From the IMG/VR virus record IMGVR_UViG_3300017917_002434, positions 186,001-250,000 of that record: a DNA stretch of 64,000 nucleotides; one strand, 5' to 3'. The position numbers were made by a program, and so were the translations under genes. The notes under the pieces were generated by a model. The model searched no databases. It saw only the letters and a program-made list of their open reading frames with translations, and was not told the DNA's origin. Of the stretch, positions 34,348 through 58,404 are shown piece after piece. Position 1 is the first letter of the stretch. Each line of letters opens with the position of its first letter.

Positions 34348-34730
34348 AATGAACTTCCCATTAATAATATTGTGTCGATTTTAGTTTTGATTATTTTATT
34401 AGTTAATGTAGTTTTTAAACCCGTGTGTACACCTTTAGGCAAAACGTCGATCATTGACCAACAAAAAGTTTGATTATTTGACGGGACAAATTCTTGATCT
34501 ACTAAGCAGATGTAAGTAGAAAATTCAAATCCGCTGTCTTGACTAAGATATAATTCTACCGGAACTAACCTAGCATCTTTACCATAGTATTCGTAGATGA
34601 TAGCTTGAGCGTCTTCTACTACAGATTTATCTCTAACAAAGCTAGGAACTGTCCATTTGAGATCTTCTAGTATCATTAAGATTCTAGAAGTTTTTTTTGA
34701 TATAAACAGGATTCCGGCATGTTTCTGCAT
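34344..34730 (-). CDS. Hypothetical protein, possibly degenerate Nudix fold
   Basis: 'AGILF......RIL', 'F.F.TY.C.V..EF.P', 'W.....LPK.(V/L)H.GL' recall phage Nudix proteins but the GX5EX7REUXEE box is missing; start set at MQKHAG, 5 nt after TATATA. Confidence 0.4.
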   Translation of the reverse strand: MQKHAGILFISKKTSRILMILEDLKWTVPSFVRDKSVVEDAQAIIYEYYGKDARLVPVELYLSQDSGFEFSTYICLVDQEFVPSNNQTFCWSMIDVLPKGVHTGLKTTLTNKIIKTKIDTILLMGSSL

Positions 34731-34741
34731 GCCTTTATATA

Positions 34742-36172
34742 TCATCCTTCTAAATCAAAGCTCCAATATCCGGCTGTGTATTCGCCTTCGAAAGATTTAA
34801 GCCATTGGCCGTCTTCCCATTTATATTGGATGCCAGTTTTGAGATTTTTGATATAGTATGGTTGAGAAATTTCAACTGACGGATCAAAGATCACAGTCCA
34901 GTCGGTACCGTTCCATTCTACGATAGAATTAGCGACTGCTACAAAATCTGAATCATCGGAATTTTTCCAAGCATCTGCTCCGTCCGAATTAGCCACCGAA
35001 CCAATATCTTCTAATATAAGATATTTCATACCTACTAATAATCCTGTTGTGGGATCAAATGTTTGAGGATTGATAATAGCATTGATGACTAAATCAGTCT
35101 GCGGCTCAGAATCAGAATCAAAGTCTACTACTAAAAATTGACTGTCTACTTCGTTGATACTAAATGTGCCTACGAGTTCGTAACCACTAGGTTGTAAAAA
35201 TCTAATACGACTAATTCCGGGTCTGTATTTTCCATACTGAGGAATAATTTTATTCCAATCAATCGCCCCAGCGGTTTTCTTAGGTATATCTAGTCCGCTT
35301 TCTACTATAGCCTCGTTGACATCTAAGGCACTGACATAGTAAGAACCAGTCTCAACACCTGTAACTGTCTTAGAAGACAACAGTAATACTCCGAAATTTC
35401 CCGGTGTAGTAATAATAGATGTTGATTTTATGTCTTTATTATCAACTGGACTATTAAACGCTAATTCTGCTAGAGGTTTTAACTGCCCATCATCATCAAA
35501 CATATTCATGATAATGTTCTGTACCACACCAAGTTTCTTAACCTTAACTGGAGGACTGATATAAATCGGCATCTCAAAATCAAGAGAACAGATGTCTATA
35601 TCAACTTCTGTGCCTTGAGGTATAGATCGAGATGTAAAATTTGAAGCGGTTAGTTCGACTACACTTAGGCTGGTCCAATCGATATAATTATCTGTAGTTT
35701 GTACCTCTAGACTGGGGTTGAATAATACTAGTATTTGCTCTAGTAATTGTAATTTTTGATCTGTGTTAGAACTCCAGATGTCTGCCCGCATACTTAATTT
35801 AAAAGGTGTAGGCATTAGTCGTTCAACAGTATAGCCGCCCCCCTGGGTGTTGTTGTATATTGGCTCGCCGGTCTCGTCATCAAAGGATTCATACGATCTT
35901 CCTCGAATACTGACCTTACTAACATAACTAGCATCGGCTAGTCTATTTCTATCTAATTCTATTCCTGTGATATAACACGCGATCTTTGGAACACTAGGCA
36001 GTTTATTTTCTGAATTTTCTCTGATGATCTGTGCTACTTGCTTGGTAAGATCGCCATAGGCAACAGGGACTTGTTTCAGAGATCCGTCGCCGGCTTGGTA
36101 CTTAAAACCAATGAAGATTCTCATAAACTGAGTTACATATCTTCGTATCTGTCCATCATAGAAAAAATCCAT
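34742..36172 (-). CDS. gp15: Tail sheath stabiliser/terminator (T4 gp15-like) with C-terminal extension
   Basis: 'FFYDGQIRRY..QF.R.F', 'VPV.YG', 'MP.P..L....DIW..N.DQKLQ.LEQILVLFNP'. Confidence 0.7.
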   Translation of the reverse strand: MDFFYDGQIRRYVTQFMRIFIGFKYQAGDGSLKQVPVAYGDLTKQVAQIIRENSENKLPSVPKIACYITGIELDRNRLADASYVSKVSIRGRSYESFDDETGEPIYNNTQGGGYTVERLMPTPFKLSMRADIWSSNTDQKLQLLEQILVLFNPSLEVQTTDNYIDWTSLSVVELTASNFTSRSIPQGTEVDIDICSLDFEMPIYISPPVKVKKLGVVQNIIMNMFDDDGQLKPLAELAFNSPVDNKDIKSTSIITTPGNFGVLLLSSKTVTGVETGSYYVSALDVNEAIVESGLDIPKKTAGAIDWNKIIPQYGKYRPGISRIRFLQPSGYELVGTFSINEVDSQFLVVDFDSDSEPQTDLVINAIINPQTFDPTTGLLVGMKYLILEDIGSVANSDGADAWKNSDDSDFVAVANSIVEWNGTDWTVIFDPSVEISQPYYIKNLKTGIQYKWEDGQWLKSFEGEYTAGYWSFDLEG

Positions 36173-37386
36173 TATTCGTCCGCCTTAGGTCTCAATGCTT
36201 TGCTCAAGCTCTGTTTTTCTTTTACTAGCTTGCCGTCTATCATACGCTCATTGGTATTATTAATGAACGTACCTTTCTGATTTTGTCTTGTTTCTCTACC
36301 TTCAAATCTTTCTCCAGATTCGGTATCCGTAGTTCCGAGATTGCTCATTGTCATTCTTACATTGTCTTCGTACTTGACCCATCTACGTCCATTAAATCTA
36401 AATAATCTCTTAGGGAAATAATCTGTTCGTAGACAGAACTGTCCTTCGACAGGATTTCCAGGAAATGTAATACCACTGGTAAATGGAGCACCGTTAGGAG
36501 TAACGCCATCTTCATGATAGTTTTGATAACCATCTTTAGTCGGTGTTGCTATGATAACGCTGGCATCAATTCCAGATCCGTCATTACTGGCTTCTATTTC
36601 GCCAGCATCGGTAGTAACTAATTTAACATTGCCTTGTTCATCAAGCGGCACAGTATAATACATAGTAGTGTCATAACCGCTCTTAGGAGAGTCTGATTCT
36701 GCTTGATCCAGAACTGCTTCAGTGATACGCATTTCTGTTTCATAGGTACTCATGATATCACGCAATGTTGTGTTAGTATCTTCGCCGGTGTCATCGGCTA
36801 GACCATCTAAGATTTGTTTAAATTCTTGACTGTCAACTAATGGCGTACATTTTGCTCTATAAAGATGAGGATACCATGTAGCTGAAAAACCTTCTGCGGC
36901 ACGATTAACTTCTTCTATAACATAAAATCTTTTTAGGGCAAATTTTAAATCATTAAGTGCGTGATAATCTTTGAGGTGAGGCAATTCGATAACATCACCC
37001 GCCAGCAATTTTCTACCAAGTTTTTCCACAGTATCGTTAATATGAAACGTTATGAAAATAGTATCGTTTTGTAAAAATAATCCAAACTGTGTTAGATTAA
37101 AATCTAAATCTGTTATATTGTATACACCTCTTAAAACATAAACATCGGGGTCGTATTTTCTATCTCGATTTTCTAAAAATAACAAATCTTGTATCTGTAG
37201 CTCGGGAATTCCGCCAGTATACACGGGTGTTGTTGGTGTGCTAGCACCGGGCAACGGATCGCCGGGTCCTATATATTTGTGAACCAATACATCAACACCG
37301 CCGACTTGAAACATTTCCCAGACGGTTTTGTCGATAAATTTGTAATCATTGCCCTTTTCTGGGCGATAAAGCGAAAGTCTTGGCAT
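36172..37386 (-). CDS. gp14: Neck protein (T4 gp14-like)
   Basis: 'IQDLLFLENRDRKY', 'L.QFGLFL..D..FITFH', 'GDV.ELPH', 'FYV.E.V'; adjacent to gp15-like and divergent from gp13-like; start set at MPRLSLY. Confidence 0.6.
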   Translation of the reverse strand: MPRLSLYRPEKGNDYKFIDKTVWEMFQVGGVDVLVHKYIGPGDPLPGASTPTTPVYTGGIPELQIQDLLFLENRDRKYDPDVYVLRGVYNITDLDFNLTQFGLFLQNDTIFITFHINDTVEKLGRKLLAGDVIELPHLKDYHALNDLKFALKRFYVIEEVNRAAEGFSATWYPHLYRAKCTPLVDSQEFKQILDGLADDTGEDTNTTLRDIMSTYETEMRITEAVLDQAESDSPKSGYDTTMYYTVPLDEQGNVKLVTTDAGEIEASNDGSGIDASVIIATPTKDGYQNYHEDGVTPNGAPFTSGITFPGNPVEGQFCLRTDYFPKRLFRFNGRRWVKYEDNVRMTMSNLGTTDTESGERFEGRETRQNQKGTFINNTNERMIDGKLVKEKQSLSKALRPKADE

Positions 37387-37393
37387 AGTCATA

Positions 37394-37414
37394 TATTTAC
37401 CGCTACGATAAATA
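37394..37414. promoter_or_regulatory. Back-to-back divergent late promoters
   Basis: TATTTA 37394-37399 (minus strand) and TAAATA 37409-37414 (plus strand) within a 33-bp gap. Confidence 0.75.
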
Positions 37415-37419
37415 CTAGC

Positions 37420-38184
37420 ATGAGCCAACTTGACCAAGAAAAACAGAAAGTATTCGACTACTGCCGTTTGATGCTGGGCGACGGTATGATCGACGTAGAA
37501 TTAGACCCACAACACTACGAAACAGCGTTACAGCGTAGTCTAGGAGTTTTTCGCCAACGTGGTGATAATTCTGTAGAAGAAAGTTTCGCATTTTTGACTT
37601 TACAAGAAAATCAAAATGTTTATACACTACCAGACGAAATTCAAGTAGTTAGGGAAATATATCGTCGAAGTATTGGATCTAGATCGGGTGGTGGAAACGG
37701 CGGTACAGTGTTTGAACCGTTTAACTTGGCCTATACAAACACTTATCTGTTAAGCTCGACTAATATGGGCGGATTACTAACCTATGAATTATTCGCAGGA
37801 TATCAGGAACGTGTGGGTAAGATGTTTGGTAGCTTCATTCAATTTACTTGGCATGCTCAAAGTCGTAAATTAACTATACATCAGCGACCTAGAACAAACG
37901 AAGAAATTATGCTTTGGTGTTATAATACACGACCGGATGTTGCTATTTTAGTCGATACTTACGCCGGTCAGTGGATCAAAGATTATACATTAGCCAACTG
38001 TAAAATAATGCTCGGCCAAGCTCGTGAAAAATTTGCCAGTATTGCTGGTCCTCAGGGCGGCACAGCACTCAACGGTGCTAGCATGAAAGCAGAAGGTCAA
38101 GCAGACATCGATAGGCTTACAGCAGAATTGGTTAATTATGTTCCAGGACACGCTAACGCCAGTTATACATTTGTTGTGGGATAA
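37420..38184 (+). CDS. gp13: Neck protein (T4 gp13-like)
   Basis: 'Y..L.LG...IDVELD..H', 'WIKDY.LA..K..LG.AR.KF..I.GP.GG..LNG..(M/L)..E'; start moved to ATG 37420. Confidence 0.75.
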   Translation: MSQLDQEKQKVFDYCRLMLGDGMIDVELDPQHYETALQRSLGVFRQRGDNSVEESFAFLTLQENQNVYTLPDEIQVVREIYRRSIGSRSGGGNGGTVFEPFNLAYTNTYLLSSTNMGGLLTYELFAGYQERVGKMFGSFIQFTWHAQSRKLTIHQRPRTNEEIMLWCYNTRPDVAILVDTYAGQWIKDYTLANCKIMLGQAREKFASIAGPQGGTALNGASMKAEGQADIDRLTAELVNYVPGHANASYTFVVG

Positions 38185-38531: not shown

Positions 38532-38560
38532 TTGACAATTTAAATATTCTATTGTATAAT
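38532..38560 (+). promoter_or_regulatory. sigma70 consensus (early) promoter
   Basis: TTGACA (38532-38537), 17 nt, TATAAT (38555-38560); GGAGG SD at 38570. Confidence 0.85.
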
Positions 38561-38579
38561 AACCTTAATGGAGGATATT

Positions 38580-39239
38580 ATGATCATAGGTATTTGCGGT
38601 TTTATTGGCAGCGGCAAAGACACCGTCGCTGACTATCTTGTAAACTTTCACGAATTTCGCAGAGAGAGTTTTGCCAACACCCTTAAAGATGCTGTAGCAG
38701 CCGTATTTGGTTGGGATCGTACTATGCTAGAAGGCCGTACCAAGGAAGCCCGAGAATGGCGAGAGCAAGTCGACCCTTGGTGGGCAGAACGTCTCGATAT
38801 GCCTACGCTTACCCCGCGATGGATTCTACAATACTGGGGTACGGAAGTCTGCCGTAAAAATTTCCATGATGACATCTGGATCGCTTCATTAGAAAATAAA
38901 CTCCGCAACTCTAAGGACAATGTCGTGATTTCAGATTGCCGATTTCCTAACGAGATACAGAGTATTCGTAATGCCGGAGGCATTGTAGTTCGTGTGATCC
39001 GCGGTGATGAGCCTGAGTGGTATAACGATGCTGTAGCAGTTAATCGAGGACCTAAACACCTACGCTGGGCACTGAGTAAAGAAAGATTGAATCAATTTAA
39101 AATCCATGCGTCCGAAACAGCATGGGTAGGTACTAAATTTGATGCTGTATTGGATAATAATGGAAGTATCAGTGACTTGTTTGAAAAGATTGAAGAACTG
39201 GTTAAAAATCAGCGACAAGATCTCCCTGTTTCCATTTAA
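38580..39239 (+). CDS. gp1: Deoxynucleoside monophosphate kinase (T4 gp1-like)
   Basis: 'IIGICGFIGSGKDT.A' P-loop, 'SFA..LKD', 'TPR..LQ.WGTE..R', 'VISDCRFPNE', 'H.SE'. Confidence 0.9.
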   Translation: MIIGICGFIGSGKDTVADYLVNFHEFRRESFANTLKDAVAAVFGWDRTMLEGRTKEAREWREQVDPWWAERLDMPTLTPRWILQYWGTEVCRKNFHDDIWIASLENKLRNSKDNVVISDCRFPNEIQSIRNAGGIVVRVIRGDEPEWYNDAVAVNRGPKHLRWALSKERLNQFKIHASETAWVGTKFDAVLDNNGSISDLFEKIEELVKNQRQDLPVSI

Positions 39240-39537
39240 TACCCTCTTTAGCTAATACACGCTGACAGTTAGCACACACTGTTTTAAGATTAGCTACTTT
39301 ACAGTTATTAAGATCTTCATCAACATGATATACTGCGAATACCTCGGGATGCAGTGATTTAAAACCGCATCGATCGCAAGAAGTTTTCTTTCTATAACCT
39401 GCCCTATACCATCTAGGTATTCCGTGATATTTTCCGTGCTTTAAGCATATCTCACAGAGAGATCTGTAATATATCTTTTTTCCTTTTCGATAGTTTATAG
39501 CAGCCGGTCTTTGTCCGCATTTACATAGGGGTCTCAT
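39202..39537 (-). CDS. Zn-finger HNH-endonuclease-like protein (111 aa)
   Basis: CxC...CxxC, then CxxC..'VYHVDEDLNN...NLKTVCANC'; start set 5 nt after minus-strand TAAATA (39543-39548). Confidence 0.65.
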   Translation of the reverse strand: MRPLCKCGQRPAAINYRKGKKIYYRSLCEICLKHGKYHGIPRWYRAGYRKKTSCDRCGFKSLHPEVFAVYHVDEDLNNCKVANLKTVCANCQRVLAKEGIKWKQGDLVADF

Positions 39538-39613
39538 ATATCTATTTAAGAAAATTGGACCTTTTCTGCCCCTTTTCCTATGGTTTAAACGCTGTGTTTT
39601 TTGGTTAGCCGAA

Positions 39614-39619
39614 TAAATA
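39614..39619 (+). promoter_or_regulatory. Late promoter core (TAAATA) for tail sheath
   Basis: gaaTAAATA; AGGAG SD before ATG 39654; divergent partner at 39543-39548. Confidence 0.7.
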
Positions 39620-43047: not shown

Positions 43048-43053
43048 TAAATA
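43048..43053 (+). promoter_or_regulatory. Late promoter core (TAAATA) for tail tube
   Basis: gaTAAATA; GGAG SD; ATG 43075. Confidence 0.7.
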
Positions 43054-43722: not shown

Positions 43723-43748
43723 AAGCCCGGAATTCCCGGGCTTTTTTT
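43723..43748 (+). terminator. Rho-independent terminator
   Basis: aagcccgg-aattc-ccgggc-ttttttt. Confidence 0.85.
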
Positions 43749-43764
43749 ATCACTAAATAATATT

Positions 43765-44889
43765 ATGTCAGACAAATTCACTAGATTTTTAAAGGGAGTA
43801 GGTCAAGGTATTACCAATCCTAAAGGTAACCTAGGCGATGCTCGTCACGCGGCTCGATTGTATATAGACAATCAGTATACAAGAGCACCGAGAACAAAAT
43901 TTTTATATCATGTACAATTTAATATAAATCGTCCAGCAGTTCTCTCTGCGAATTTTTTAAAGCTTCATCAAAAAACGATTGATATGATGGTTAAACAGGC
44001 AGACTTGCCTAAGATAACATTAGAACACGAAATAAAAAATCAATATAATAGAAAAAAAGTTATCTACAAAGATATAAAATATGAAGGTCTTAATATTGTA
44101 TTTCACGATGACAACCTCGGTGTGATTAACGCTCTCTGGGCACAATACCTATCGTGGTATTCCAATGAAAGATTATTGCCTCCCACATTCTGGACTCAGA
44201 CAAATGGCCCCTACTCTCCCTTAGATGGGACTCAATCCGGAGACGAAAGAATTGCGATAACCGGAGCAGCGGCCGGAGCAGATGATCCTCAATCCGGAAC
44301 TGTTCGATACGGACTAGATGTGCCAAAAAAGGCGTTCGTAAGACCGTTTTTTGATTCGATAACCATCTATACATTGAGCAGGAAAAAATTTAATTCTTAT
44401 ACATTGATTAATCCGCATATAACTAGTTGGAATCATGGAAACGTAGATCAAGCTTCTAATAACGGAACCATCGAAGCAACTATGAACATAGTCTATGAAA
44501 CTGTGCTATACGGCACCGGCAGCATCGTTAAAGGAACCTCGGCTACAGCGGCATTACCGAGACAGTTTACTGATCTGTATTACGATAAAACACCTAGCCC
44601 ATTGACTATACAGGGCGGACAGCTCACTAGTCTTTTTGGCCCGGGCGGTTTGCTTAACGCAGGATCGAGTATCATCGAGGATGCTCCATTAATATACGGA
44701 GTAGGTAATGTTCAAGGGGATATTACAGGCTCGTCTGGTCTTGAACAGGCCATTAAAGCAATTAATCTTTACAAGAGTTTAGCATCATTACGGCCCGAAA
44801 ATCTCATAGCTGAAGCCACTAATATTATTTTAACTCCGGGTGCTGTCGGTAATGCTGTAAGCGGAATCCCCGGAGTCCGCTTCAAATAA
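43765..44889 (+). CDS. Tail-tube-fold baseplate/tube initiator protein (gp48/gp54-like)
   Basis: 'P..KFLYHV.F', 'VK..DLPK......KNQYNRK', 'I.FHDDN', 'Y.LINP.ITSW.H'; TAAATA-N5-ATG start. Confidence 0.55.
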   Translation: MSDKFTRFLKGVGQGITNPKGNLGDARHAARLYIDNQYTRAPRTKFLYHVQFNINRPAVLSANFLKLHQKTIDMMVKQADLPKITLEHEIKNQYNRKKVIYKDIKYEGLNIVFHDDNLGVINALWAQYLSWYSNERLLPPTFWTQTNGPYSPLDGTQSGDERIAITGAAAGADDPQSGTVRYGLDVPKKAFVRPFFDSITIYTLSRKKFNSYTLINPHITSWNHGNVDQASNNGTIEATMNIVYETVLYGTGSIVKGTSATAALPRQFTDLYYDKTPSPLTIQGGQLTSLFGPGGLLNAGSSIIEDAPLIYGVGNVQGDITGSSGLEQAIKAINLYKSLASLRPENLIAEATNIILTPGAVGNAVSGIPGVRFK

Positions 44890-45282: not shown

Positions 45283-45722
45283 TGGTACGGTTCGCCCAGG
45301 GAAAATTCGAGATGAAGAATCCCGACAAATACATCGGGAAAAAAACACCACTGGCACGTAGTTCATGGGAGTTTGTTTTCATGCGTATGTTAGACGAACA
45401 CCCGGGAGTTGAGAAATGGGCGAGCGAAAGTATACAGATTCCTTATAGAGATCCACTAACAGGCAAATATACAATATATGTGCCTGATTTTTTTATCGTG
45501 TACAACGATAAGGGTGGAAAAAAACATGCCGAGGTCGTTGAAGTAAAACCGAGCAATCATATGTTCTTAGAAAAAGTAGGAAAAAGTAGATACAATCAAG
45601 AGCAGTATGTAAAAAACATGGCTAAGTGGGAAGCGGCAAACGCTTGGTGTAAACAACAGGGTATAAAGTTTAGAGTAGTCAACGAAGACGATATTTTCCA
45701 CAAAGGCTCAAAACGCAGATAA
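45282..45722 (+). CDS. gp4: Head completion nuclease (T4 gp4-like, TnsA-type PD-(D/E)xK)
   Basis: 'G.F..KNP.KYIG', 'RSSWE..FM', 'W.SE...IPY..P', 'Y.PDF', 'VEVKP', 'N.AKW.AA..WC', 'F.V..E'. Confidence 0.85.
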   Translation: MVRFAQGKFEMKNPDKYIGKKTPLARSSWEFVFMRMLDEHPGVEKWASESIQIPYRDPLTGKYTIYVPDFFIVYNDKGGKKHAEVVEVKPSNHMFLEKVGKSRYNQEQYVKNMAKWEAANAWCKQQGIKFRVVNEDDIFHKGSKRR

Positions 45723-45729
45723 GTATAGT

Positions 45730-46212
45730 ATGACGAAAAAACTTGAAGAACTATTCAATTTAGAGGATACTAGGAACGTAGAAGTTAAGGTTCCTGTAAT
45801 CGAAGAATCTAAGGATGAAGTACGGGATCTAGAACGTAGTTATAGGGAAGTCGATGCTATAGCTGGACAATTACCGGCTATCGCAGATCTAGAAAATCTC
45901 GGAGAAAACGAACTTGATGCGTTAGCAAAAAAAGCCGAAGAAGCCTATGATGATCTCATGGATTTAGGCATGAATGTAGAAGTACGATACAGCGGAAGAA
46001 TTTTTGAAGTAGCAGGAACTATGCTTAAAAATGCCATAGATGCTAAATCTGCTAAAATTGACAAAAAGCTCAAAGCTATAGATGCTAAATTGAAAAAATT
46101 AAAAATTGACAAAGATGCTGGCGACGAGGATCCTAATAGTATGCTTAACGGGCAGGCCTTTGTCATAACCGATCGCAACGAGTTATTGAAAAAACTCCAA
46201 GGAAAGGAATAA
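45730..46212 (+). CDS. Terminase small subunit (gp16-like)
   Basis: Helical 'A...YDDLMDLG.....R...R.FEVA..ML..A' and C-terminal 'DRNELLK'; lies upstream of TerL. Confidence 0.55.
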   Translation: MTKKLEELFNLEDTRNVEVKVPVIEESKDEVRDLERSYREVDAIAGQLPAIADLENLGENELDALAKKAEEAYDDLMDLGMNVEVRYSGRIFEVAGTMLKNAIDAKSAKIDKKLKAIDAKLKKLKIDKDAGDEDPNSMLNGQAFVITDRNELLKKLQGKE

Positions 46213-46220
46213 ATACTGAT

Positions 46221-46784
46221 ATGAAAACACTAAAAGATTACCTAGCTGAGAGTAAAAAAACCTACGGATTTCGCATCAAAGTAGCAGGTCCCTTGCCAGA
46301 AGGCTTTGAAGATAGAGCCAAAGCAAAAATGGGCAAATACGGCTGCGGCAAATTTGAAAAGGTTGCTACTACTCCTATCCAAAAAACTGCTCTAGAGTTC
46401 CTAGACCTATCAAACATTGAAGTTACTGTTTTTGAGTGTGAGTGTTCATACCCAGTAACACCACAGCAGGTACAGGTAGATATCCATGAGTCTACTGGTA
46501 TTTCTAATACTCATCTAAGAGTTAGAAATGTTAATGATCCATTTGAACAAGCAGAACCCCTAGGCGATCCTAGTGGAAAAGCATTGTTAAATGACAGCGA
46601 ATTAAAAGATGCTGAAAAAATCAAACACAAAGAAAATTTTGGAAATGAATTTACAGCATCGTTCTTGAAAGATATTGCTAAAGTCAGCAAAGAAAGAACA
46701 AAAGAATCAAATCAGGGCGAATATAAGATGCCCAAAACACCTAAACAAGATAAAGCAGGCATGAAAAGTGCCTTGGGGAGTTAA
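46221..46784 (+). CDS. Hypothetical protein with capsid-targeting-like N-terminus (187 aa)
   Basis: MKTLKDYLAE|SKK; TAAATA-N5-ATG start. Confidence 0.5.
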   Translation: MKTLKDYLAESKKTYGFRIKVAGPLPEGFEDRAKAKMGKYGCGKFEKVATTPIQKTALEFLDLSNIEVTVFECECSYPVTPQQVQVDIHESTGISNTHLRVRNVNDPFEQAEPLGDPSGKALLNDSELKDAEKIKHKENFGNEFTASFLKDIAKVSKERTKESNQGEYKMPKTPKQDKAGMKSALGS

Positions 46785-47343: not shown

Positions 47344-47371
47344 AAATAGGCTCTTCGGAGCCTATTTTTTT
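47344..47371 (+). terminator. Rho-independent terminator with cUUCGg loop
   Basis: aaataggctc-ttcg-gagcctattttttt. Confidence 0.9.
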
Positions 47372-47385
47372 CATTAAATAGTTGT

Positions 47386-48972
47386 ATGGCAAAGTCATTA
47401 GATGGTAATCTCATCAAGAAAGCACATGCCCAGACCAAATATACTTTAGAAGAAGTAAAGCATCTGGAAGCATGTATGGATCCTGTAACAGGACCTTTGT
47501 ATTTCTGTAGGAATTTTTTAAAGATCCAACATCCTGTTCGTGGAAGTATTCCATTTGAACCTTACGAATATCAAGAAAGATTAATACAGGCCTATCACGA
47601 AAACAAGCAGTGTATTGCTATGTTACCTCGTCAGATGGGTAAGACAACCTGTGCCACAGGTTATCTATTATGGTATACAATGTTTGTACCAGAAGCACAG
47701 GTTCTGATCGCTGCTCACAAATATGAGGGTGCTCAGGATATTATGAATCGTTATCGCTATGGTTATGAAAATCTGCCTGACTTTATACGTGCTGGTGTTT
47801 ATAGTTATAATAGGAATACAATCGAGTATGATAATGGTGCTCGTATCCAAGCAACCACAACCACTGAAAACACCGGTCGTGGTAAATCGCTATCCTTAAT
47901 TTACTGTGACGAGTTTGCGTTCGTACAGCCGCCAGAGAAAGCCAAGGAGTTCTGGACTGCCTTATCACCGACATTGTCTACAGGCGGTAAGTGTATTATT
48001 ACATCAACACCAAACTCAGACGAAGATCAGTTTGCTCTTATCTGGACAGAAGCTAACAAAAAGTTTGACGAGTTTGGCAACGAACAAAAACTAGGTACCA
48101 ACGGATTCTACAGTTATTTCGCACACTGGGCAGAGCATCCAGATCGTGATGAAGAGTGGGCTAAGGTAGAACGTGCCAAGATCGGTGAAGAGCGTTTCCG
48201 CCGTGAGTTTGACTGCGAGTTCTTGATCTTTGACGAAACATTAATCAACGCAGTAAAACTAGCCGAACTCAAAGGTAGCGAACCTGTAATGACTATGGGT
48301 CAGACACGTTGGTATAAAGAAATAAATCCGCAGGCCACATATCTCATAGCACTAGATCCTAGCTTGGGCACAGGCGGCGACTATGCTGCCATAGAAGTTT
48401 TTGAGATGCCTGCTATGGAGCAGGTAGCAGAATGGCGACACAATCTAACACCTATACAAAGTCAAGTAAAACATATGAGAGAAATATTAAAATATATTTC
48501 TGAACGATCGATGGAATTAGGTGGACAGCCCCAGATTTATTATTCTGTAGAAAATAATTCGTTAGGCGAAGCAGCATTGATCGTCATTAATGATATAGGC
48601 GAAGAGAATTTTCCTGGACTATTTTTAAGTGAACCTATACGCAAAGGACATGTGCGTAAGTTCCGCAAAGGATTTAACACAACACACAGGACTAAAGTAA
48701 CTGCCTGTAGTCAACTTAAAAATATGCTAGAAACCTATAAGATGAAAATACATAGTAAGCCTCTGATTTCTGAGCTAAAAACATTCGTAGCACACGGTGT
48801 GGGTTTTGGTGCTAAAACAGGAGAACACGACGATCTAGTTTCGTCCACTCTGTTAATCATACGTATGGCTGGTATCTTAGCAGATTGGGATCCGCACATA
48901 TATGAAAAAATGACAGAACGACTGTCTGAAGAACAGTTACCCATGCCCATTTATGTAAGTTCTATATATTAA
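47386..48972 (+). CDS. gp17: Terminase large subunit (T4 gp17-like)
   Basis: 'F..Y.YQ', Walker A 'PRQMGKTT', 'GRG.S..L.Y.DEFAF', 'IITSTPN', nuclease 'ALDPS.G.GGDY', 'HDDLV'. Confidence 0.95.
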   Translation: MAKSLDGNLIKKAHAQTKYTLEEVKHLEACMDPVTGPLYFCRNFLKIQHPVRGSIPFEPYEYQERLIQAYHENKQCIAMLPRQMGKTTCATGYLLWYTMFVPEAQVLIAAHKYEGAQDIMNRYRYGYENLPDFIRAGVYSYNRNTIEYDNGARIQATTTTENTGRGKSLSLIYCDEFAFVQPPEKAKEFWTALSPTLSTGGKCIITSTPNSDEDQFALIWTEANKKFDEFGNEQKLGTNGFYSYFAHWAEHPDRDEEWAKVERAKIGEERFRREFDCEFLIFDETLINAVKLAELKGSEPVMTMGQTRWYKEINPQATYLIALDPSLGTGGDYAAIEVFEMPAMEQVAEWRHNLTPIQSQVKHMREILKYISERSMELGGQPQIYYSVENNSLGEAALIVINDIGEENFPGLFLSEPIRKGHVRKFRKGFNTTHRTKVTACSQLKNMLETYKMKIHSKPLISELKTFVAHGVGFGAKTGEHDDLVSSTLLIIRMAGILADWDPHIYEKMTERLSEEQLPMPIYVSSIY

Positions 48973-48985
48973 GATAAATATAAAC

Positions 48986-50728
48986 ATGGAAGATAATATC
49001 AAAAGTGTAAGCACTGACCTTTTTTACAAGATTAGAAGCCGATTTTCAGGCCTAAAATTAGGATCTGAATTAGGCGAAATTACCATCAACCCAGAAGAAG
49101 CTGTATTCTTTGATTTTGATTACATGGAAGGACAAAATCCTGTCGGACATGTAAGCATCAGTCTAGCTGAGCCTGGAAACATGAAAGTCTACTATAGTAC
49201 AGGTATTACTGAAAATATGGATGCTGTACAGAAAGATACATGGTATGATTTTTTAAGAGGACTTAGAGAATTTGCCAAAAGACGATTAATGAGTTTTGAT
49301 ACACGAGATATTACTAAGGATAATTTAGATCAAAGAGACTTTAGTTTCTTGAGTCAATACGCAAATAATACACCTGTCGGAGAGGGAGTTATGAAAGAAG
49401 GAATGTACGGTACTGCTAAAACCAGTTACCAAAAATTAGAAAACACAAGATTGATCATCAAACACGATCAACAGGTAGATGAAACTAGCCCGGGTGCTCG
49501 AACCAGACACATCAATGCTATGTTCATAGAAAACGGCCAAGGTGAGCGATTTAAATATCCGTTCATTCATTTAGCAGGTGCTCGTGCTATGCAGAGGCAT
49601 GTACAGGAAGGCGGTTTGCCCTACGACGATATTGGCAAACACATCATTGGTATCAGTGAAAAAATCGCACATCTAAAGAATTTTGGAAATTACGTAGTAC
49701 GAAATGATCTCATGAACTCCGAAACTAATGAGATCGTCGGTCGTGCTCATGAAACACTAGATAGTCTAAGAGAAACAATTAAAAAATTAGCCAAGAAAAG
49801 TCATTATGAACAATTTAAGGCACAGTTCCAGGCAGAACAGGTAACAGAGGTACCAGAAGAGTTCATCGAAGATCTAACTAATAAATTTACAGTAAAGAAT
49901 TTCAAAGAAGATATCAAGGCCGCATTCCCTATCATTTATAGCCTAATGCAGACCAAAGAAGATATACATTATGACGACATAGTCGCGATGACTCAACCAA
50001 CTAACGAAGAAGTAGAACTCGACCTCGAAAGCGTAGAAGAATTTGATGATCCATTTTCAAAATTTGAAGATTGGGCTATGAACTTAGGCGAAGATAATGC
50101 TATCACTAGTCAAGACGAAGAAGAAAAAGCAGCAGCAGTAGAAAAATTACAGGCTCTGGTAGGCGAACATTTTCCCGCAGGTGTTGATGGTCAAAACGCC
50201 ATCAGCAGCTTAAAAGGCATAATCGACGATCCCGAACTAGCACGTGAAATCAAAGATGCTGCTAAAGAAGACGCAGACACTTGCGTTCGACCTTTAGTAT
50301 ATCAATGGCTAGAAAATAATGCTCCAGACGTAGTGGACGAATTAGATTTTGGTGACATGGATATGCCAGACGAACCTCAATATGATGACGAAGGCGGAGA
50401 CACAGATGATTCTTACGCTCTAGCATCGGCAGGTCACGGATCTGATGAGGACTATGGAGACTTTGGCAACGAATACGAAGGAATCGATCCCCAAGAACAA
50501 AAAATAAATGTGCAAGAAGTTGCTGAATTTATGTTTACAGGCTATGATCCAATCAAAAAAACATTTCCTAAAGGCCCAGAAGGTATGATCACTATGGTAG
50601 GCAAAAAATTTGGACCAAAGGCCGAATCCGCAGCACGTGAATTAGTGATGCGTATGGCACCTAACCAAAATACACAAGTACCACAGGTAAATGAATTATC
50701 AAGAATCAAAGAATTATCTGGACTATAA
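48986..50728 (+). CDS. Hypothetical protein (580 aa) with very acidic C-terminal third
   Basis: TAAATA-N5-ATG late start; ends 'ELSRIKELSGL'; no recognised catalytic motif. Confidence 0.55.
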   Translation: MEDNIKSVSTDLFYKIRSRFSGLKLGSELGEITINPEEAVFFDFDYMEGQNPVGHVSISLAEPGNMKVYYSTGITENMDAVQKDTWYDFLRGLREFAKRRLMSFDTRDITKDNLDQRDFSFLSQYANNTPVGEGVMKEGMYGTAKTSYQKLENTRLIIKHDQQVDETSPGARTRHINAMFIENGQGERFKYPFIHLAGARAMQRHVQEGGLPYDDIGKHIIGISEKIAHLKNFGNYVVRNDLMNSETNEIVGRAHETLDSLRETIKKLAKKSHYEQFKAQFQAEQVTEVPEEFIEDLTNKFTVKNFKEDIKAAFPIIYSLMQTKEDIHYDDIVAMTQPTNEEVELDLESVEEFDDPFSKFEDWAMNLGEDNAITSQDEEEKAAAVEKLQALVGEHFPAGVDGQNAISSLKGIIDDPELAREIKDAAKEDADTCVRPLVYQWLENNAPDVVDELDFGDMDMPDEPQYDDEGGDTDDSYALASAGHGSDEDYGDFGNEYEGIDPQEQKINVQEVAEFMFTGYDPIKKTFPKGPEGMITMVGKKFGPKAESAARELVMRMAPNQNTQVPQVNELSRIKELSGL

Positions 50729-50747
50729 TAACTTATAACTCGAGATT

Positions 50748-50873: not shown

Positions 50874-51056
50874 ATGAAATCAGTAGTAACTTTATTCGCT
50901 ACACTCTTCGCAGTTTCTGCTTTTGCCCAAGCACCTGCAGCTCCTGCTAAGAAAGAAGAAGCAAAGCCTGCTGCCGCAGCACCTGCTAAGAAAGAAGAAG
51001 CAAAGCCAGCAGCACCAGCTAAGAAAGAAGAAAAGAAAGACGCAGCCAAGAAGTAA
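50874..51056 (+). CDS. Small secreted Ala/Lys/Pro/Glu-rich peptide (60 aa) with Sec signal peptide
   Basis: GGAG SD; MK + hydrophobic core + AFA|Q cleavage motif; three PAKKEE repeats; own terminator. Confidence 0.75.
   Translation: MKSVVTLFATLFAVSAFAQAPAAPAKKEEAKPAAAAPAKKEEAKPAAPAKKEEKKDAAKK
50943..51031 (+). repeat. Three copies of cc(t/a)gctaagaaagaagaa (PAKKEE) within the small peptide gene
   Basis: Read directly from the sequence. Confidence 0.85.
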
Positions 51057-51130: not shown

Positions 51131-51204
51131 TATAAATAAATCACGCATAATAACAATATGCGTAAGGCATACATTTTAAGGCATATTAAAGGAGGCAATT
51201 TAAA
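51131..51204 (+). promoter_or_regulatory. Perfect T4 late promoter (TATAAATA) and structured/repetitive gp32 leader
   Basis: TATAAATA 51131-51138; hairpin acgcata/tatgcgt 51143-51163; AGGCA at 51165, 51179, 51193; GGAGG SD. Confidence 0.65.
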
Positions 51205-54655: not shown

Positions 54656-54673
54656 TATTTAGTTAGATAAATA
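54656..54673. promoter_or_regulatory. Divergent late promoter pair
   Basis: TATTTA 54656-54661 (minus) and TAAATA 54668-54673 (plus). Confidence 0.65.
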
Positions 54674-56245: not shown

Positions 56246-56823
56246 AGAAAAACAAATATGTGATCGACGAAGCAGCACCACATTTAGGCGGAAATTTGCT
56301 CTTCGGTGATGCTAATACATGGGCACCATTGGCCTGGGAATATATTTTAGAAAATTTTGATATAAAGTCCATGACAGATCTTGGATCAGGATTAGGACAC
56401 GCTGCTAAATGGTTTACAGACAAATCTATTGTTGTAACAGCAGTCGATGGGCTGTCTTACAATGTAGACAATGCCATATTACCAACAGTGCTTCATGATT
56501 TAACTGTTGGTCCATATACTAACGCAGTTGATCTAGTTTACTGTGTAGAAGTAGTAGAACACATAGAAGAAAAATATTTAGATAATCTGTTAACTTCATT
56601 AACTCAAGGTTCGTATCTTTTTATGACACATGCTGTGCCCGGTCAAGATGGATATCACCATGTTAATTGTAGAGACAGTGATTATTGGATCAATCACTTG
56701 CTAGACAGAAATTTTATATTACTAGATGAAGCTTCGGAAAAAATTAGATCTCTAGCAGCAGAAAATAATGCTATACATATTTCAAGAAACGGAATGATTT
56801 TTAAAAAATTATTGTCTGTGTAA
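56242..56823 (+). CDS. Class I SAM-dependent methyltransferase
   Basis: 'DLGSGLG', 'AVDG', 'DLVYCVEVVEHIEE', 'PGQ.G.HHVN'; start moved to ATG 56242 (ATGA coupling). Confidence 0.75.
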   Translation: MKKNKYVIDEAAPHLGGNLLFGDANTWAPLAWEYILENFDIKSMTDLGSGLGHAAKWFTDKSIVVTAVDGLSYNVDNAILPTVLHDLTVGPYTNAVDLVYCVEVVEHIEEKYLDNLLTSLTQGSYLFMTHAVPGQDGYHHVNCRDSDYWINHLLDRNFILLDEASEKIRSLAAENNAIHISRNGMIFKKLLSV

Positions 56824-57579
56824 TTTATTAATTTCTTTTACAGACTCTAGTAATCTCTGAGGCGTACCTATATCGAGTCCGTGTTCTACGATAGCAGCGA
56901 CGTCTTTAGGAAAACAAGCACCGCCATAACCAAACTGTCCGTCGGGGCCCGGGACATCCCAATGACTATTTCCTAGTCTAGTATCATTTTTAGCTATCTC
57001 TTTTATTTCTTTCCAGTCTACTCCTACGGCCTTAGCTAGATGAAACAGATCGTTCATAAACGTAACCTTAGTTGCCATAAAAGCATTAGCCATATATTTG
57101 AAAAGACTGGCCGAGGCAATGTCTGTGATATGATAGTGTTTGGCCTGTATCGTGCTAGATGAAATTATTTGTTTTGCTCTCTCGCAAAATCGAGGATTGC
57201 CACCTATCAACACCCATGTTGATGTTTCGTAATCTTCGGTAGCATTAGCCGCTGTAAGAAATTCGGGAGCATGTACTAGGTTTGGATATTGATCTTGTAA
57301 TCTTAGATATACCCCTGGAGGAACTGTGCTTTTACATATAATAACACCGTCGTATCCTTCTAATTCTTTTAACACAGATTTTACATACGAATCATCACAA
57401 TGCCCATCTTCCAACATTGGCGTTGGTACGCAGATGTATACAGCATCGCAACTTTTAATATCTTTTATAGTTGCTGATTGATCTCCCAATTTAGGATCTC
57501 TAGCAATAAAATGTTGATATCTGTGAGTATGGGCCACAGCTGAACCTACATACCCTAATCCAAAAATTCCTATTTTCAT
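56809..57579 (-). CDS. ugd: UDP-glucose/GDP-mannose 6-dehydrogenase, short form lacking the C-terminal domain
   Basis: 'GLGYVG', 'ICVPTP', 'KSTVPPG', 'PEFL', 'KY.AN.F.A.KV.F.N', catalytic 'GYGGACFPKD'. Confidence 0.85.
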   Translation of the reverse strand: MKIGIFGLGYVGSAVAHTHRYQHFIARDPKLGDQSATIKDIKSCDAVYICVPTPMLEDGHCDDSYVKSVLKELEGYDGVIICKSTVPPGVYLRLQDQYPNLVHAPEFLTAANATEDYETSTWVLIGGNPRFCERAKQIISSSTIQAKHYHITDIASASLFKYMANAFMATKVTFMNDLFHLAKAVGVDWKEIKEIAKNDTRLGNSHWDVPGPDGQFGYGGACFPKDVAAIVEHGLDIGTPQRLLESVKEINKLHRQ

Positions 57580-57601
57580 CAAGTCCTCTCTAACCACAGT
57601 T

Positions 57602-57631
57602 TATTTAGTGGGTATATTATTCAAATAAATA
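57602..57631. promoter_or_regulatory. Divergent late promoter pair
   Basis: TATTTA 57602-57607 (minus) and TAAATA 57626-57631 (plus, 5 nt before ATG 57637). Confidence 0.65.
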
Positions 57632-57636
57632 GAAAC

Positions 57637-58404
57637 ATGAAAATTGTTTTAGTTACTGGTGGGTTTGATCCGATTCATTCCGGACACATAAGTTATTTTA
57701 AGTCGGCACGTACCTTAGGCGATATGCTCATAGTCGGATTAAATTCTGATGATTGGTTAGAGCGTAAAAAAGGTCGTGCGTTTATGCCGTGGAATGAAAG
57801 ATTGTGTATTATCAATAATCTTTCAATGGTAGACGAAGTTTACACATTCGATGACGAAGATGGTTCTGCTAAACATTTTATTCAGCAGGTCCGAGCTCAT
57901 TACCCTGATGCTGAATTGATATTTGCCAACGGCGGCGATCGCACAGCAAAAAATATTCCCGAAATGGATGTTCAAGATTCTAATCTACGTTTCGAATTCG
58001 GTGTCGGCGGAGAAGATAAAAAGAACTCTAGCAGCTGGATCTTACAAGAGTGGAAGGCTCCAAAAACAGAAAGACCCTGGGGATATTATAGGGTATTACA
58101 CGAAGTTACTGGATGTAAAGTAAAAGAGCTAACAGTGAATCCTGGACAGAGTCTAAGTCTACAAAGACATAAAGATAGAACAGAAATATGGTTAGTAGCC
58201 AAAGGTCAATGTATGGTAGAACATTATGGTCATGCTATACAATCTGATGCGTATCTTGTTCAAACCCCCTTACATACTCACAGCGAATATCATGTCAGTA
58301 GAACTGCCTGGCATAGATTGTTTAATCCATATAACGAACCTTGTCAGATAGTTGAAATTCAATACGGCGATCGCTGTGTTGAGGAGGACATAGAAAGAAA
58401 ATGA
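57637..58404 (+). CDS. HxGH nucleotidyltransferase (TagD/RfaE-II-like) fused to a mannose-6-phosphate-isomerase-like cupin
   Basis: 'TGGFDPIHSGH', 'GLNSD.WL.RKKG..FM', 'FANGGDR', 'K.NSSS'; then 'RPWG.Y.VL', 'V.PGQSLSLQRH..R.E.W', 'EIQYG..C.E.DIER'. Confidence 0.85.
   Translation: MKIVLVTGGFDPIHSGHISYFKSARTLGDMLIVGLNSDDWLERKKGRAFMPWNERLCIINNLSMVDEVYTFDDEDGSAKHFIQQVRAHYPDAELIFANGGDRTAKNIPEMDVQDSNLRFEFGVGGEDKKNSSSWILQEWKAPKTERPWGYYRVLHEVTGCKVKELTVNPGQSLSLQRHKDRTEIWLVAKGQCMVEHYGHAIQSDAYLVQTPLHTHSEYHVSRTAWHRLFNPYNEPCQIVEIQYGDRCVEEDIERK

What the first reader, a model, noticed from the sequence alone, without database searches (positions are those of the whole stretch)
34730..57637. Systematic TAAATA-N5-ATG architecture implies leaderless late mRNAs
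Seen: the late motif is exactly 5 nt from the ATG at 37420, 39537(-), 43765, 46221, 47386, 48986 and 57637, mostly with no usable SD; variants at 34730(-) (TATATA-N5) and 45730 (TAAGTA-N4). Abundant proteins (sheath, tube, gp32, giant fibre) instead have 15-65 nt leaders with GGAG-type SDs. Known: T4 gp55 transcripts start a few nt after TATAAATA. Inference: a two-tier late programme in which low-copy assembly/packaging proteins use leaderless translation and high-copy ones use SD-led translation.
Basis: partly seen in the sequence, partly recalled or inferred. Interest (0 to 1): 0.62.

Follow-up and report, generated by a model that had tools for sequence, protein, structure and literature searches.

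The report
Promoters abutting start codons: leaderless phage genes
In this uncultivated freshwater jumbo phage about one gene in ten has a promoter box placed so that transcription should begin exactly at the ATG, which implies ribosome-binding-site-free (leaderless) mRNAs for both early-type and late-type genes; this is well supported by sequence and comparative evidence but not yet by RNA 5' ends.

Summary
TAAATA-N5-ATG occurs 7 times in the window against 1.6 expected. Genome-wide (269.7 kb) there are 15 ORF-opening hits at N5 against 0.65 per offset (P about 7e-16). TAAATA is about 3-fold depleted overall.

The motif, its spacing and the ATG are conserved in up to 80 IMG/VR relatives while the spacer varies. 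A 364-kb relative sharing about 70% nucleotide identity shows the same peak. PA5oct and GAP32 have no peak, and T4 shows no clear enrichment.

The genome encodes a gp55-family late sigma factor. These genes lack SD pairing, usually have a pyrimidine at -1, and often sit just after terminators or in 10-70 nt divergent gaps.

One new result changes the reading. Sigma70-type TTGACA-N17-TATAAT promoters also abut ATGs, at N6. That one-base difference is what the geometry of the two promoter classes predicts if +1 is the A of the ATG.

So leaderless expression is very likely, but it is not specific to late genes. No informative RNA 5' ends were available.

Verdict: a new variant of known kinds (T4-type late promoter plus leaderless mRNA). 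Interest is moderate to high.

The parts
37409..37422 (+). TAAATA-N5-ATG. Predicted leaderless late promoter and start of gene 37420-38184, a head-tail adaptor Ad2-like protein.
   Evidence: Exact match. phrog_211, E 1.5e-34. The G001 orthologue (85% aa identity) keeps ATAAATA-N5-ATG. Lies 27 nt from a divergent gene.
37394..37399 (-). TAAATA on the minus strand, with ATGs at 37392 (N1) and 37386 (N7). Possible near-leaderless start of the divergent 404-406 aa gene.
   Evidence: Which ATG is used was not resolved.
39535..39548 (-). TAAATA-N5-ATG. Predicted leaderless start of gene 39537..39202 (111 aa, unknown function).
   Evidence: The G001 orthologue (75% aa identity) has TAAGTA-N5-ATG. No PHROG or Pfam hit.
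43723..43750 (+). Intrinsic terminator hairpin plus T-tract (bidirectional). It ends 3 nt before the next promoter box.
   Evidence: The hairpin and T-run are conserved in relatives.
43754..43767 (+). TAAATA-N5-ATG. Predicted leaderless start of gene 43765-44889 (374 aa, weak tail-tube-like).
   Evidence: Orthologues in 51 loci at only 33-74% aa identity keep terminator, TAAATA, N5 and ATG, with varying spacers.
45720..45732 (+). TAAGTA-N4-ATG variant. Start of gene 45730-46212 (160 aa, weak small-terminase-like).
   Evidence: ATAAGTA-N4/5-ATG is conserved in 63 loci.
46210..46223 (+). TAAATA-N5-ATG. Its TAA is the stop codon of the upstream gene. Start of gene 46221-46784 (virion structural protein).
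   Evidence: Conserved in 64 loci at 42-92% aa identity. A metatranscriptome contig begins at 46224 and none spans 46062-46223; this is weak evidence.
47344..47374 (+). Intrinsic terminator hairpin plus T-tract, ending immediately before the TerL promoter box.
   Evidence: Conserved in relatives.
47375..47388 (+). TAAATA-N5-ATG. Predicted leaderless start of the large terminase gene 47386-48972.
   Evidence: About 72 of 80 relatives keep TAAATA at N4-6 with more than 15 different spacers. Six have a TAAGGA SD instead.
48975..48988 (+). TAAATA-N5-ATG. Predicted leaderless start of gene 48986-50728 (580 aa virion structural protein).
   Evidence: Conserved in 73 loci at 53-97% aa identity.
57626..57639 (+). 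TAAATA-N5-ATG. Predicted leaderless start of gene 57637-58404 (cytidylyltransferase-like plus mannose-6-P isomerase/cupin).
   Evidence: The G001 orthologue has TATAAATA-N5-ATG. Divergent from gene 57579(-).
34728..34741 (-). TATATA-N5-ATG weak variant, ATG at 34730. Uncertain member.
   Evidence: In the G001 orthologue the upstream frame is closed, so the start aligns with 34730. The box there is TACATA.
31236..31273 (+). Sigma70-type promoter TTGACA-N17-TATAAT-N6-ATG. Predicted leaderless early/middle start of gene 31271-31666 (nucleotidyltransferase-like).
   Evidence: The G001 orthologue (131 aa) has TTGACA ... TAAAAT-N5-ATG.
38532..38570 (+). Perfect 12/12 sigma70-type promoter TTGACA-N17-TATAAT, then N7-ATG. 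Predicted leaderless or 1-nt-leader start of the dNMP kinase gene 38568-39239.
   Evidence: Anti-SD energy +0.9.
39614..39619 (+). TAAATA late box 34 nt upstream of the sheath gene ATG (39654). Leadered, with an AGGAG SD.
43048..43053 (+). TAAATA late box 21 nt upstream of the tail tube gene ATG (43075). Minimal leader of about 16 nt with a GGAG SD.
   Evidence: Part of the clade keeps ATAAATA plus SD.
7715..7720 (+). TAAATA late box 24 nt upstream of the 1999-aa fibre-like gene (7745). SD-led.
54656..54673 (.). Back-to-back TAAATA boxes, minus strand 54661-54656 and plus strand 54668-54673. Each lies 21 nt from its divergent gene (54634- and 54695+). Leadered class.

Best explanation
The window belongs to an uncultivated freshwater jumbo myophage. 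Complete relatives have genomes of about 355 kb, and the nearest cultured relatives are PA5oct, Phosso, Atu_ph07 and the Rak2-like phages.

The phage uses two promoter classes. One is the host sigma70 type, TTGACA-N17-TATAAT, found in front of replication and nucleotide-metabolism genes. The other is a -10-only late class with core (A)TAAATA, read by host RNA polymerase carrying a phage gp55-family sigma factor and found in front of virion and packaging genes.

In about 30 of roughly 300 genes the -10 element sits at the exact distance that puts the transcription start on the A of the ATG. That distance is N5 (range 4-6) for TAAATA and N6 (range 5-8) for TATAAT. The resulting mRNA would start with 5'-AUG, carry no Shine-Dalgarno sequence, and would be expected to initiate by the known leaderless route, direct binding of 70S or 30S-IF2-fMet-tRNA to the terminal AUG.

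The remaining promoter-proximal genes have short leaders of 14-60 nt with GGAG-type SDs. Internal cistrons are SD-led or translationally coupled.

Shown here: the motif, its spacing, its conservation, the lack of SD, the sigma factor gene, and the functional split between the two promoter classes.

Inferred: the actual 5' ends, that leaderless translation is efficient in the unknown host, and any dosage role.
For: 1. There is a sharp N5 peak: 15 against 0.65 per offset, P 7e-16. TAAATA is about 3-fold depleted genome-wide.
2. The peak recurs in relative G001 (about 70% nt identity over aligned parts): N4 = 9, N5 = 14, P 1e-14. The pattern is also enriched in four other clade genomes, 65 hits against 17 for the control across the five.
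3. Orthologues at 29-97% aa identity keep box, spacing and ATG while the spacer sequence changes. Of 19 own candidates with a G001 homologue, about 15 keep the box.
4. Sigma70-type promoters, which include a -35 box and so are a DNA-level signal, independently peak at N6 (own 7, P 1.7e-4; G001 10, P 2.8e-5). This is one nt more than the late class. That is expected because TATAAT ends at -7, whereas TATAAATA ends at -6 as I read the numbering of the gp55 open-complex structure, with adenines at -12 and -9 (PMC7892883).
5. SD pairing is absent in both leaderless classes.
6. The base at -1 is a pyrimidine in 19 of 22 own sites and 22 of 26 G001 sites, matching the usual Y(-1)R(+1) start preference.
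7. Three sites lie 0-6 nt after an intrinsic terminator T-tract. About ten sit in divergent gaps of 10-70 nt, some with a box on each strand.
8. A gp55-family sigma factor lies at genome 152761-153615 (phrog_12791, E 4e-80; T4 gp55 family phrog_234, E 7e-24). It keeps 5 of the 7 DNA-pocket residues of T4 gp55 and lies next to a gp47-like gene, as in T4.
9. TAAATA-linked genes are structural or packaging genes. TTGACA/TATAAT-linked leaderless genes are primase, SbcD-like nuclease, dNMP kinase and a MazG-like gene.
10. The same (A)TAAATA box was proposed as the late promoter of CBB and GAP32 (PMC5259590). There it lies 20-40 nt upstream with an SD.
Against: - No transcript 5' end was observed. 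The only RNA data were sparse metatranscriptome contigs, which cannot define ends and may include DNA.
- The gp55-like protein is 284 aa with a long N-terminal extension, so its start-site distance could differ from that of T4.
- No gp45 clamp homologue was found, although the contig is only 76% complete.
- The host is unknown. If it is a proteobacterium, as weakly hinted, leaderless mRNAs are usually translated poorly there.
- About nine late-type sites follow a co-oriented gene by 3-33 nt with no terminator, so those ORFs are probably also present on read-through polycistronic RNA.
- A few clade members replaced the TerL box with an SD, so the arrangement is not obligatory.
Confidence: 0.72

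Rival explanations
1. Two-tier late dosage programme. Leaderless starts are a device specific to late genes that keeps low-copy assembly and packaging proteins scarce, while abundant virion proteins use SD-led leaders.
For: TerL, the TerS-like protein and the head-tail adaptor are in the leaderless set. MCP, sheath, tube and gp32 are SD-led with strong GGAG/AGGAGG sites.
Against: Leaderless geometry is equally present at sigma70-type promoters of replication and nucleotide-metabolism genes. The low-copy baseplate hub and wedge are SD-led. The leaderless set includes enzymes (radical-SAM-like, cytidylyltransferase/cupin), a 580-aa virion protein, a tube-like protein and many small unknown proteins whose copy number is unknown. 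No expression data exist.
Confidence: 0.3
2. RNA-level signal. TAAATA at -11 to -6 replaces the SD as an A/U-rich, unstructured ribosome standby or enhancer site on longer, polycistronic mRNAs. On this reading the genes are not leaderless.
For: The box occupies exactly the position where an SD would sit. About nine sites directly follow a co-oriented gene without a terminator. A/U-rich enhancers are known from general knowledge.
Against: The same hexamer sits 16-35 nt upstream of SD-led late genes, where it cannot act as an RBS. Several sites follow a terminator T-tract or lie in 10-40 nt divergent gaps. The sigma70-type cases carry a -35 box 17 nt upstream and peak one nt further out, which only a DNA-level promoter geometry explains. 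Genome-wide depletion of TAAATA fits avoidance of spurious promoters.
Confidence: 0.1
3. Genome compaction by-product. Promoters are simply squeezed against start codons. Real transcripts start a few nt inside or upstream, and these genes are mainly expressed from upstream promoters.
For: Coding density is about 94% and intergenic gaps are short.
Against: Compaction alone would not fix the spacing to within about 1 nt or conserve it across genomes about 70% identical in nucleotide sequence. It would not remove the SD, and it would not give different offsets for the two promoter classes. PA5oct and GAP32 are similarly compact and lack the peak.
Confidence: 0.07
4. Chance or a base-composition artefact.
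For: The genome is AT-rich (39% GC).
Against: None of 100 dinucleotide shuffles reaches the observed count. Poisson P is 7e-16. Of 16 N5 ATGs, 15 open ORFs of at least 60 codons. The arrangement is conserved in relatives.
Confidence: 0.01

Closest known systems
T4 late promoters (TATAAATA, gp55/gp33/gp45-dependent)
   Same: A -10-only element with the same TAAATA core, no -35 box, and a gp55-family sigma factor encoded by the phage. It drives virion and packaging genes. The expected start is 6 nt after the box (PMC2988020, PMC7892883).
   Different: The upstream TA of the octamer is not conserved; A is only preferred at -12. The sigma factor is 284 aa with an N-terminal extension. No gp45 homologue was found. 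T4 shows no marked box-N5-ATG enrichment, 10 hits against 5 for the control; that T4 late mRNAs have SD-bearing leaders is my own knowledge, not tested here.
Predicted late promoter ATAAATA of Rak2-like jumbo phages CBB and GAP32, and the PA5oct/Phosso relatives
   Same: Same box in front of structural genes, a gp55-like sigma factor, and no gp33 or gp45 reported (PMC5259590). These are the closest cultured relatives by TerL, at 44-53% aa identity.
   Different: In GAP32 and PA5oct the box lies about 20-40 nt upstream of SD-led starts. There is no N5 peak and no N6 peak for sigma70-type promoters.
Thermus phage phiYS40 middle/late leaderless transcripts
   Same: A large myophage in which a whole temporal class of mRNAs lacks leaders (secondary citation, review PMC3594737).
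   Different: The host is Thermus, a phylum in which leaderless genes are common. According to that review the phage appears to shift host IF2/IF3 levels. It has no gp55-type late promoter as far as I know (not checked here). In the present phage only about a third of promoter-proximal genes are leaderless, and both promoter classes take part.
The '-10 region adjacent to ORF' architecture of Deinococcus-Thermus; also actinobacterial leaderless genes and lambda cI from PRM
   Same: A -10 element at a fixed short distance from the start codon, no RBS, and a 5'-AUG mRNA (PMC12340547, PMC10491246).
   Different: Those are cellular or temperate-phage sigma70/SigA promoters. Here the arrangement is systematic in a lytic-type jumbo phage, extends to a phage-specific sigma class, and coexists with strong SD use.

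Membership tests
T4-type (gp55-dependent) late promoter | -10-like A/T box related to TATAAATA, with no conserved -35 element | tested here: met
   The TAAATA core is invariant, A is preferred at the position before it, and the 8 nt further upstream show no conservation. The full T4 octamer is rare: 2 in the window, 11 in the genome.
T4-type (gp55-dependent) late promoter | Phage encodes a gp55-family sigma factor | tested here: met
   Genome 152761-153615: phrog_12791, E 3.9e-80; phrog_234, E 7e-24; phmmer hit to T4 gp55, E 1.8e-6; 5 of 7 pocket residues conserved.
T4-type (gp55-dependent) late promoter | Precedes late (virion or packaging) genes | tested here: met
   Sheath, tube, baseplate wedge and hub, fibres, TerL, adaptor and virion structural proteins.
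T4-type (gp55-dependent) late promoter | Activation through the sliding clamp gp45 and co-activator gp33 | tested here: inconclusive
   No phrog_223 (gp45) match in the contig, but the contig is only 76% complete. gp33 was not searched. CBB relatives are also reported to lack both (PMC5259590).
T4-type (gp55-dependent) late promoter | Transcription starts about 6 nt downstream of the box, late in infection | not testable with these tools
   Only sparse metatranscriptome contigs were available.
Leaderless mRNA gene | Primary 5' end at, or within about 2 nt of, the A of the start codon | not testable with these tools
   Inferred from promoter geometry only. One RNA-library contig begins at 46224, 3 nt inside the ORF, which is not diagnostic.
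Leaderless mRNA gene | -10 element at a fixed distance of about 5-7 nt from the start codon | tested here: met
   N5 peak for TAAATA and N6 peak for TATAAT, in two genomes.
Leaderless mRNA gene | No Shine-Dalgarno pairing upstream of the start | tested here: met
   Mean energy -0.9 kcal/mol against -4.2 to -5.3 for other genes. Sigma70-type cases are all -3.7 or weaker.
Leaderless mRNA gene | AUG (not GUG or UUG) start codon | tested here: met
   All of the roughly 31 candidates use ATG. This discriminates only weakly, because 94% of all genes use ATG.
phiYS40-like temporal leaderless programme | Most transcripts of one temporal class are leaderless | tested here: not met
   Only about 22 of the roughly 60 TAAATA boxes lying upstream of genes are at N4-6, and sigma70-type promoters show the same architecture.

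The most novel reading that the evidence does not exclude
A globally distributed freshwater jumbo-phage clade has evolved a dual initiation regime in a host that otherwise uses strong SD sites. The clade has more than 590 TerL relatives in IMG/VR. Dozens of early and late genes would be transcribed as 5'-AUG mRNAs from both host-sigma70 and phage-gp55-type promoters. The phage-encoded ribosomal protein bS21, found in both complete clade genomes, or another phage factor would retune ribosomes between SD-led and leaderless messages during infection.
Probability: 0.15. Interest if true: 0.8.

Novelty: new variant of a known kind. Interest (0 to 1): 0.6.

Why it matters
If the 5' ends are confirmed, this would be, as far as the searched literature shows, the first case of gp55/T4-type late promoters producing leaderless mRNAs. 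It would also be a rare case of a lytic jumbo phage using leaderless initiation systematically, for about 10% of its genes, in both temporal classes.

The one-nucleotide offset between the two promoter classes is a built-in natural experiment on start-site selection.

It has practical consequences. RBS-based gene callers will mis-place these starts. The motif-plus-spacing rule also allows promoter, start-codon and operon annotation across hundreds of related metagenomic contigs.

It raises a testable question: why did this clade, unlike its cultured relatives PA5oct and GAP32, collapse its leaders? Candidate reasons are host ribosome properties, escape from host or phage mRNA-targeting factors, and dosage control.

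Tried and rejected
- Nucleotide search of the phage collection with window 43000-51000 found no match. Relatives were reachable only at the protein level.
- The canonical T4 octamer TATAAATA is not the signal here. It occurs 2 times in the window, fewer than chance.
- RNA evidence was not informative. Only two freshwater metatranscriptome runs hold 7-15% of the sampled words, and they are kept as contigs. Coverage was patchy and no 5'-end information could be taken. I treat the contig starting at 46224 as non-diagnostic.
- Phage-encoded IF3 as a leaderless-translation modulator: no IF3_C hit in the own genome or in two complete relatives.
- Host identification through bS21 stayed unresolved. 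Its closest homologues are unnamed metagenome proteins. The nearest cellular ones are Burkholderiales and Nitrosomonadales at 46-54% identity, which is only a weak hint.
- The bS21 huge phages of PMC9723584 (293-331 kb, 31-34% GC, Bacteroidetes hosts) are probably a different clade, judged from genome size and GC only.
- The GTG at 57597(-) with TAAATA-N4 was rejected as a start. The in-frame ATG at 57579 with an SD (N22) is preferred.
- The primary phiYS40 paper could not be read, so only the review statement is cited.
- gp33 was not searched.

Full report
**What the sequence is**

The window is bases 186001-250000 of a single 269,730-bp IMG/VR viral contig with 38.8% GC. CheckV estimates it to be 76% complete.

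It carries T4-like myophage genes:
- sheath at 39654-43013 and tail tube at 43075-43704;
- large terminase at 47386-48972;
- gp32-like SSB and UvsX;
- a head-tail adaptor;
- outside the window, a gp23-type capsid protein and a gp20-type portal.

By TerL, the nearest cultured phages are:

| Phage | TerL aa identity |
|---|---|
| Pseudomonas phage PA5oct | 53% |
| Sinorhizobium phage Phosso | 52% |
| Agrobacterium phage Atu_ph07 | 48% |
| Rak2-like phages GAP32 and CBB | 44-45% |

More than 590 IMG/VR contigs encode a TerL relative; the 80 best kept are 87-96% identical to the query. Two near-complete genomes of the clade are 353 and 364 kb. Metatranscriptome runs holding parts of the sequence are labelled freshwater.

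**Checking the observation**

All seven exact TAAATA-N5-ATG sites exist at the stated coordinates. The count is 7 against 1.63 expected, and no shuffle reached 7. Each ATG opens a real ORF.

The pattern holds across the whole genome:
- TAAATA occurs only 144 times on both strands, against about 440 expected from composition.
- The distance from the box to the next ORF-opening ATG peaks sharply at N5 (15) with a shoulder at N4 (5).
- Background is 0.65 per offset, giving P = 7e-16.
- A broader hump lies at N16-35.

Without assuming any motif, TAAATA ending 5 nt before the ATG is the commonest (hexamer, offset) combination upstream of first-ATG ORFs. It is ahead of every SD hexamer.

- TAAGTA-N4 at 45730 is real and conserved.
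- For 34730(-), the start codon is supported by orthology, but the TATATA box is weak.

Genes with the box at N3-7 have essentially no anti-SD complementarity, averaging -0.9 kcal/mol. Leadered late genes average -5.3 and all other genes -4.2.

**Is TAAATA a promoter?**

Several lines say yes.
- The genome encodes a gp55-family late sigma factor at genome 152761-153615 (284 aa). It matches phrog_12791 at E 3.9e-80 and the T4 gp55 family phrog_234 at E 7e-24.
- It lies next to a gp47/SbcD-like gene, as in T4.
- It keeps five of the seven residues (N13, R57, F86, Y97, T99) that form the base-flipping pockets of T4 gp55 (PMC7892883).
- The box is the 3' six bases of the T4 late octamer. It lies within the ATAAATA motif already proposed as the late promoter of CBB and GAP32 (PMC5259590).
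- It precedes sheath, tube, baseplate wedge and hub, fibres, TerL, adaptor and other virion proteins.
- It often follows intrinsic terminators directly.
- Its depletion elsewhere in the genome fits selection against spurious promoters.

**Does the geometry imply leaderless mRNAs?**

T4 late promoters sit at the position of the bacterial -10 element (PMC2988020). In the gp55 open-complex structure the flipped adenines are numbered -12 and -9. By my reading this places TATAAATA at -13 to -6, so +1 is the sixth base after the box. TAAATA-N5-ATG therefore puts +1 on the A of the ATG.

Five independent features agree with this.

1. Sigma70-type promoters in this genome also abut start codons, but at N6. 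There are 7 cases at N5-7 in the own genome (P 1.7e-4) and 10 in relative G001 (P 2.8e-5). Examples are a perfect TTGACA-N17-TATAAT in front of the dNMP kinase gene at 38568 and another in front of 31271. TATAAT ends at -7, so N6 again puts +1 on the A. The one-base difference between the classes is what DNA-level promoter geometry predicts. An RNA-level signal would not explain it.
2. The base before the ATG is a pyrimidine in 19 of 22 own sites and 22 of 26 G001 sites. This is the usual Y(-1)R(+1) start preference.
3. Three sites (43765, 47386 and genome 171589) begin 0-6 nt after a terminator T-tract.
4. About ten sites lie in divergent gaps of only 10-70 nt. Some have a box on each strand, for example genome 25852(-)/25892(+) and 264677(-)/264709(+).
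5. SD pairing is missing in both leaderless classes.

**Comparative evidence**

Across the 80 related loci, the orthologues of 43765, 46221, 47386 and 48986 retain box, spacing (mostly N5, some N4 or N6) and ATG. Protein identity goes as low as 33-56%, and the five spacer bases vary freely. SD-led neighbours (tube, gp32) retain their SDs instead.

In the complete relative G001 (364 kb, about 70% nt identity over aligned parts):
- the whole-genome histogram shows the same peak, N4 = 9 and N5 = 14;
- about 15 of the 19 own candidates with a homologue there keep the box, twice as TAAGTA.

Four further clade genomes are also enriched. Across all five, the pattern occurs 65 times against 17 for the reversed-pattern control.

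The cultured relatives differ:
- PA5oct and GAP32 show no N5 or N6 peak. Their (A)TAAATA boxes sit 20-40 nt upstream of SD-led starts.
- T4 shows no marked enrichment.
- Six TerL relatives within the clade carry a TAAGGA SD in place of the box, so the two architectures interconvert.

**What is not shown**

No 5' ends were observed. Two freshwater metatranscriptome runs hold only patches of the region, as assembled contigs. One 172-nt contig begins at 46224, 3 nt inside the ORF that should start the transcript at 46221, and nothing covers 46062-46223. Contig ends are not transcript ends, and DNA carry-over cannot be excluded.

The host is unknown. Three things point weakly to Pseudomonadota:
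- the consensus sigma70 promoters;
- the hosts of cultured relatives;
- the nearest cellular homologues of a clade-encoded bS21, which are Burkholderiales and Nitrosomonadales at 46-54% identity.

If that is correct, efficient leaderless translation would itself need explaining.

The split between leaderless and SD-led genes is real, but it is neither late-specific nor cleanly tied to abundance.

| Class | Genes |
|---|---|
| Sigma70-type, leaderless | primase, SbcD-like nuclease, dNMP kinase, MazG-like pyrophosphohydrolase, a nucleotidyltransferase |
| Late-type, leaderless | TerL, TerS-like protein, adaptor, two virion proteins, a tube-like protein, a radical-SAM-like protein, a cytidylyltransferase/cupin enzyme, many small unknowns |
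| SD-led | abundant MCP, sheath, tube and gp32, and also the low-copy baseplate hub and wedge |

A dosage role stays possible for individual genes but is untested.

**Comparison with known systems and novelty**

Four things are already known:
- T4-type late promoters;
- the ATAAATA motif of Rak2-like phages;
- leaderless mRNAs in lambda cI and in phiYS40 middle/late genes (PMC3594737, PMC10491246);
- the '-10 adjacent to ORF' signature of Deinococcus-Thermus genes (PMC12340547).

I found no paper linking gp55-type promoters or this phage group to leaderless transcripts. The PA5oct transcriptome paper reports only sigma70-like promoters.

I rate the finding as a new variant of known kinds. It is well supported by sequence statistics and conservation, and it awaits 5'-end mapping.

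Noticed in passing
L144:12242-12490 (-) in relative G001; also G002:C1:33352-33510: Both near-complete clade genomes encode a ribosomal protein bS21 homologue (Pfam PF01165, E 2e-16 and 1.5e-19). None is present in the 76%-complete contig that holds the window. The gene just downstream in G001 (193 aa) has a TTGACA-N17-TATACT-N6-ATG promoter, and the TTGACA contains the S21 stop codon.
   Followed up: partly
window 51131-51205: The gp32-like SSB gene has one of the window's two perfect T4 octamers, TATAAATA at 51131-51138; the other lies at 949-956. A stem-loop follows in the 61-nt leader (about 51141-51165), and then the strongest SD in the region (AGGAGG, -11.6 kcal/mol). This may be a translational operator like that of T4 gene 32.
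   Followed up: no
window 31271-31666, 57637-58404 and 56812-57579 (-): There are two cytidylyltransferase-like paralogues (phrog_7878), one behind a sigma70-type and one behind a late-type leaderless promoter. The second is fused to a mannose-6-P isomerase/cupin domain and lies divergent from a UDP-glucose-dehydrogenase-like gene. Together these suggest sugar-nucleotide metabolism of unknown purpose.
   Followed up: partly
L119:7-2314 (genome 7-2314): The contig begins inside a tRNA cluster (Ser-GCT at nt 7-99, then Met-CAT and Gly-TCC). This fits a truncated assembly. No tRNAs occur elsewhere in the contig.
   Followed up: no
window 2060-7702, 7745-13744, 23151-31232; genome 51943-60465 and 175202-180868: Five giant ORFs of 1880-2841 aa, presumably fibre or whisker proteins as in Rak2-like phages. 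Only 7745 (N24) and genome 51943 and 175202 have a nearby TAAATA box.
   Followed up: no
L039-L118, upstream of the TerL match: Six of 80 clade relatives have a TAAGGA Shine-Dalgarno 9 nt before the TerL ATG instead of terminator plus TAAATA-N5. Two others have neither. Leaderless and SD-led forms of the same gene therefore coexist in the clade.
   Followed up: partly
window 43723-43743: A perfect palindromic GC-rich hairpin is scored as a terminator on both strands, with T-runs on each side. It separates the tube gene from the tube-like gene.
   Followed up: no
genome 8061(-)/8072(+): Two divergent genes have ATGs only 10 nt apart. The minus-strand gene has TAAATA-N4 lying over the first codons of the plus-strand gene. 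The plus-strand gene has its TAAATA (N26) inside the minus-strand gene. The promoters are therefore fully interleaved.
   Followed up: no
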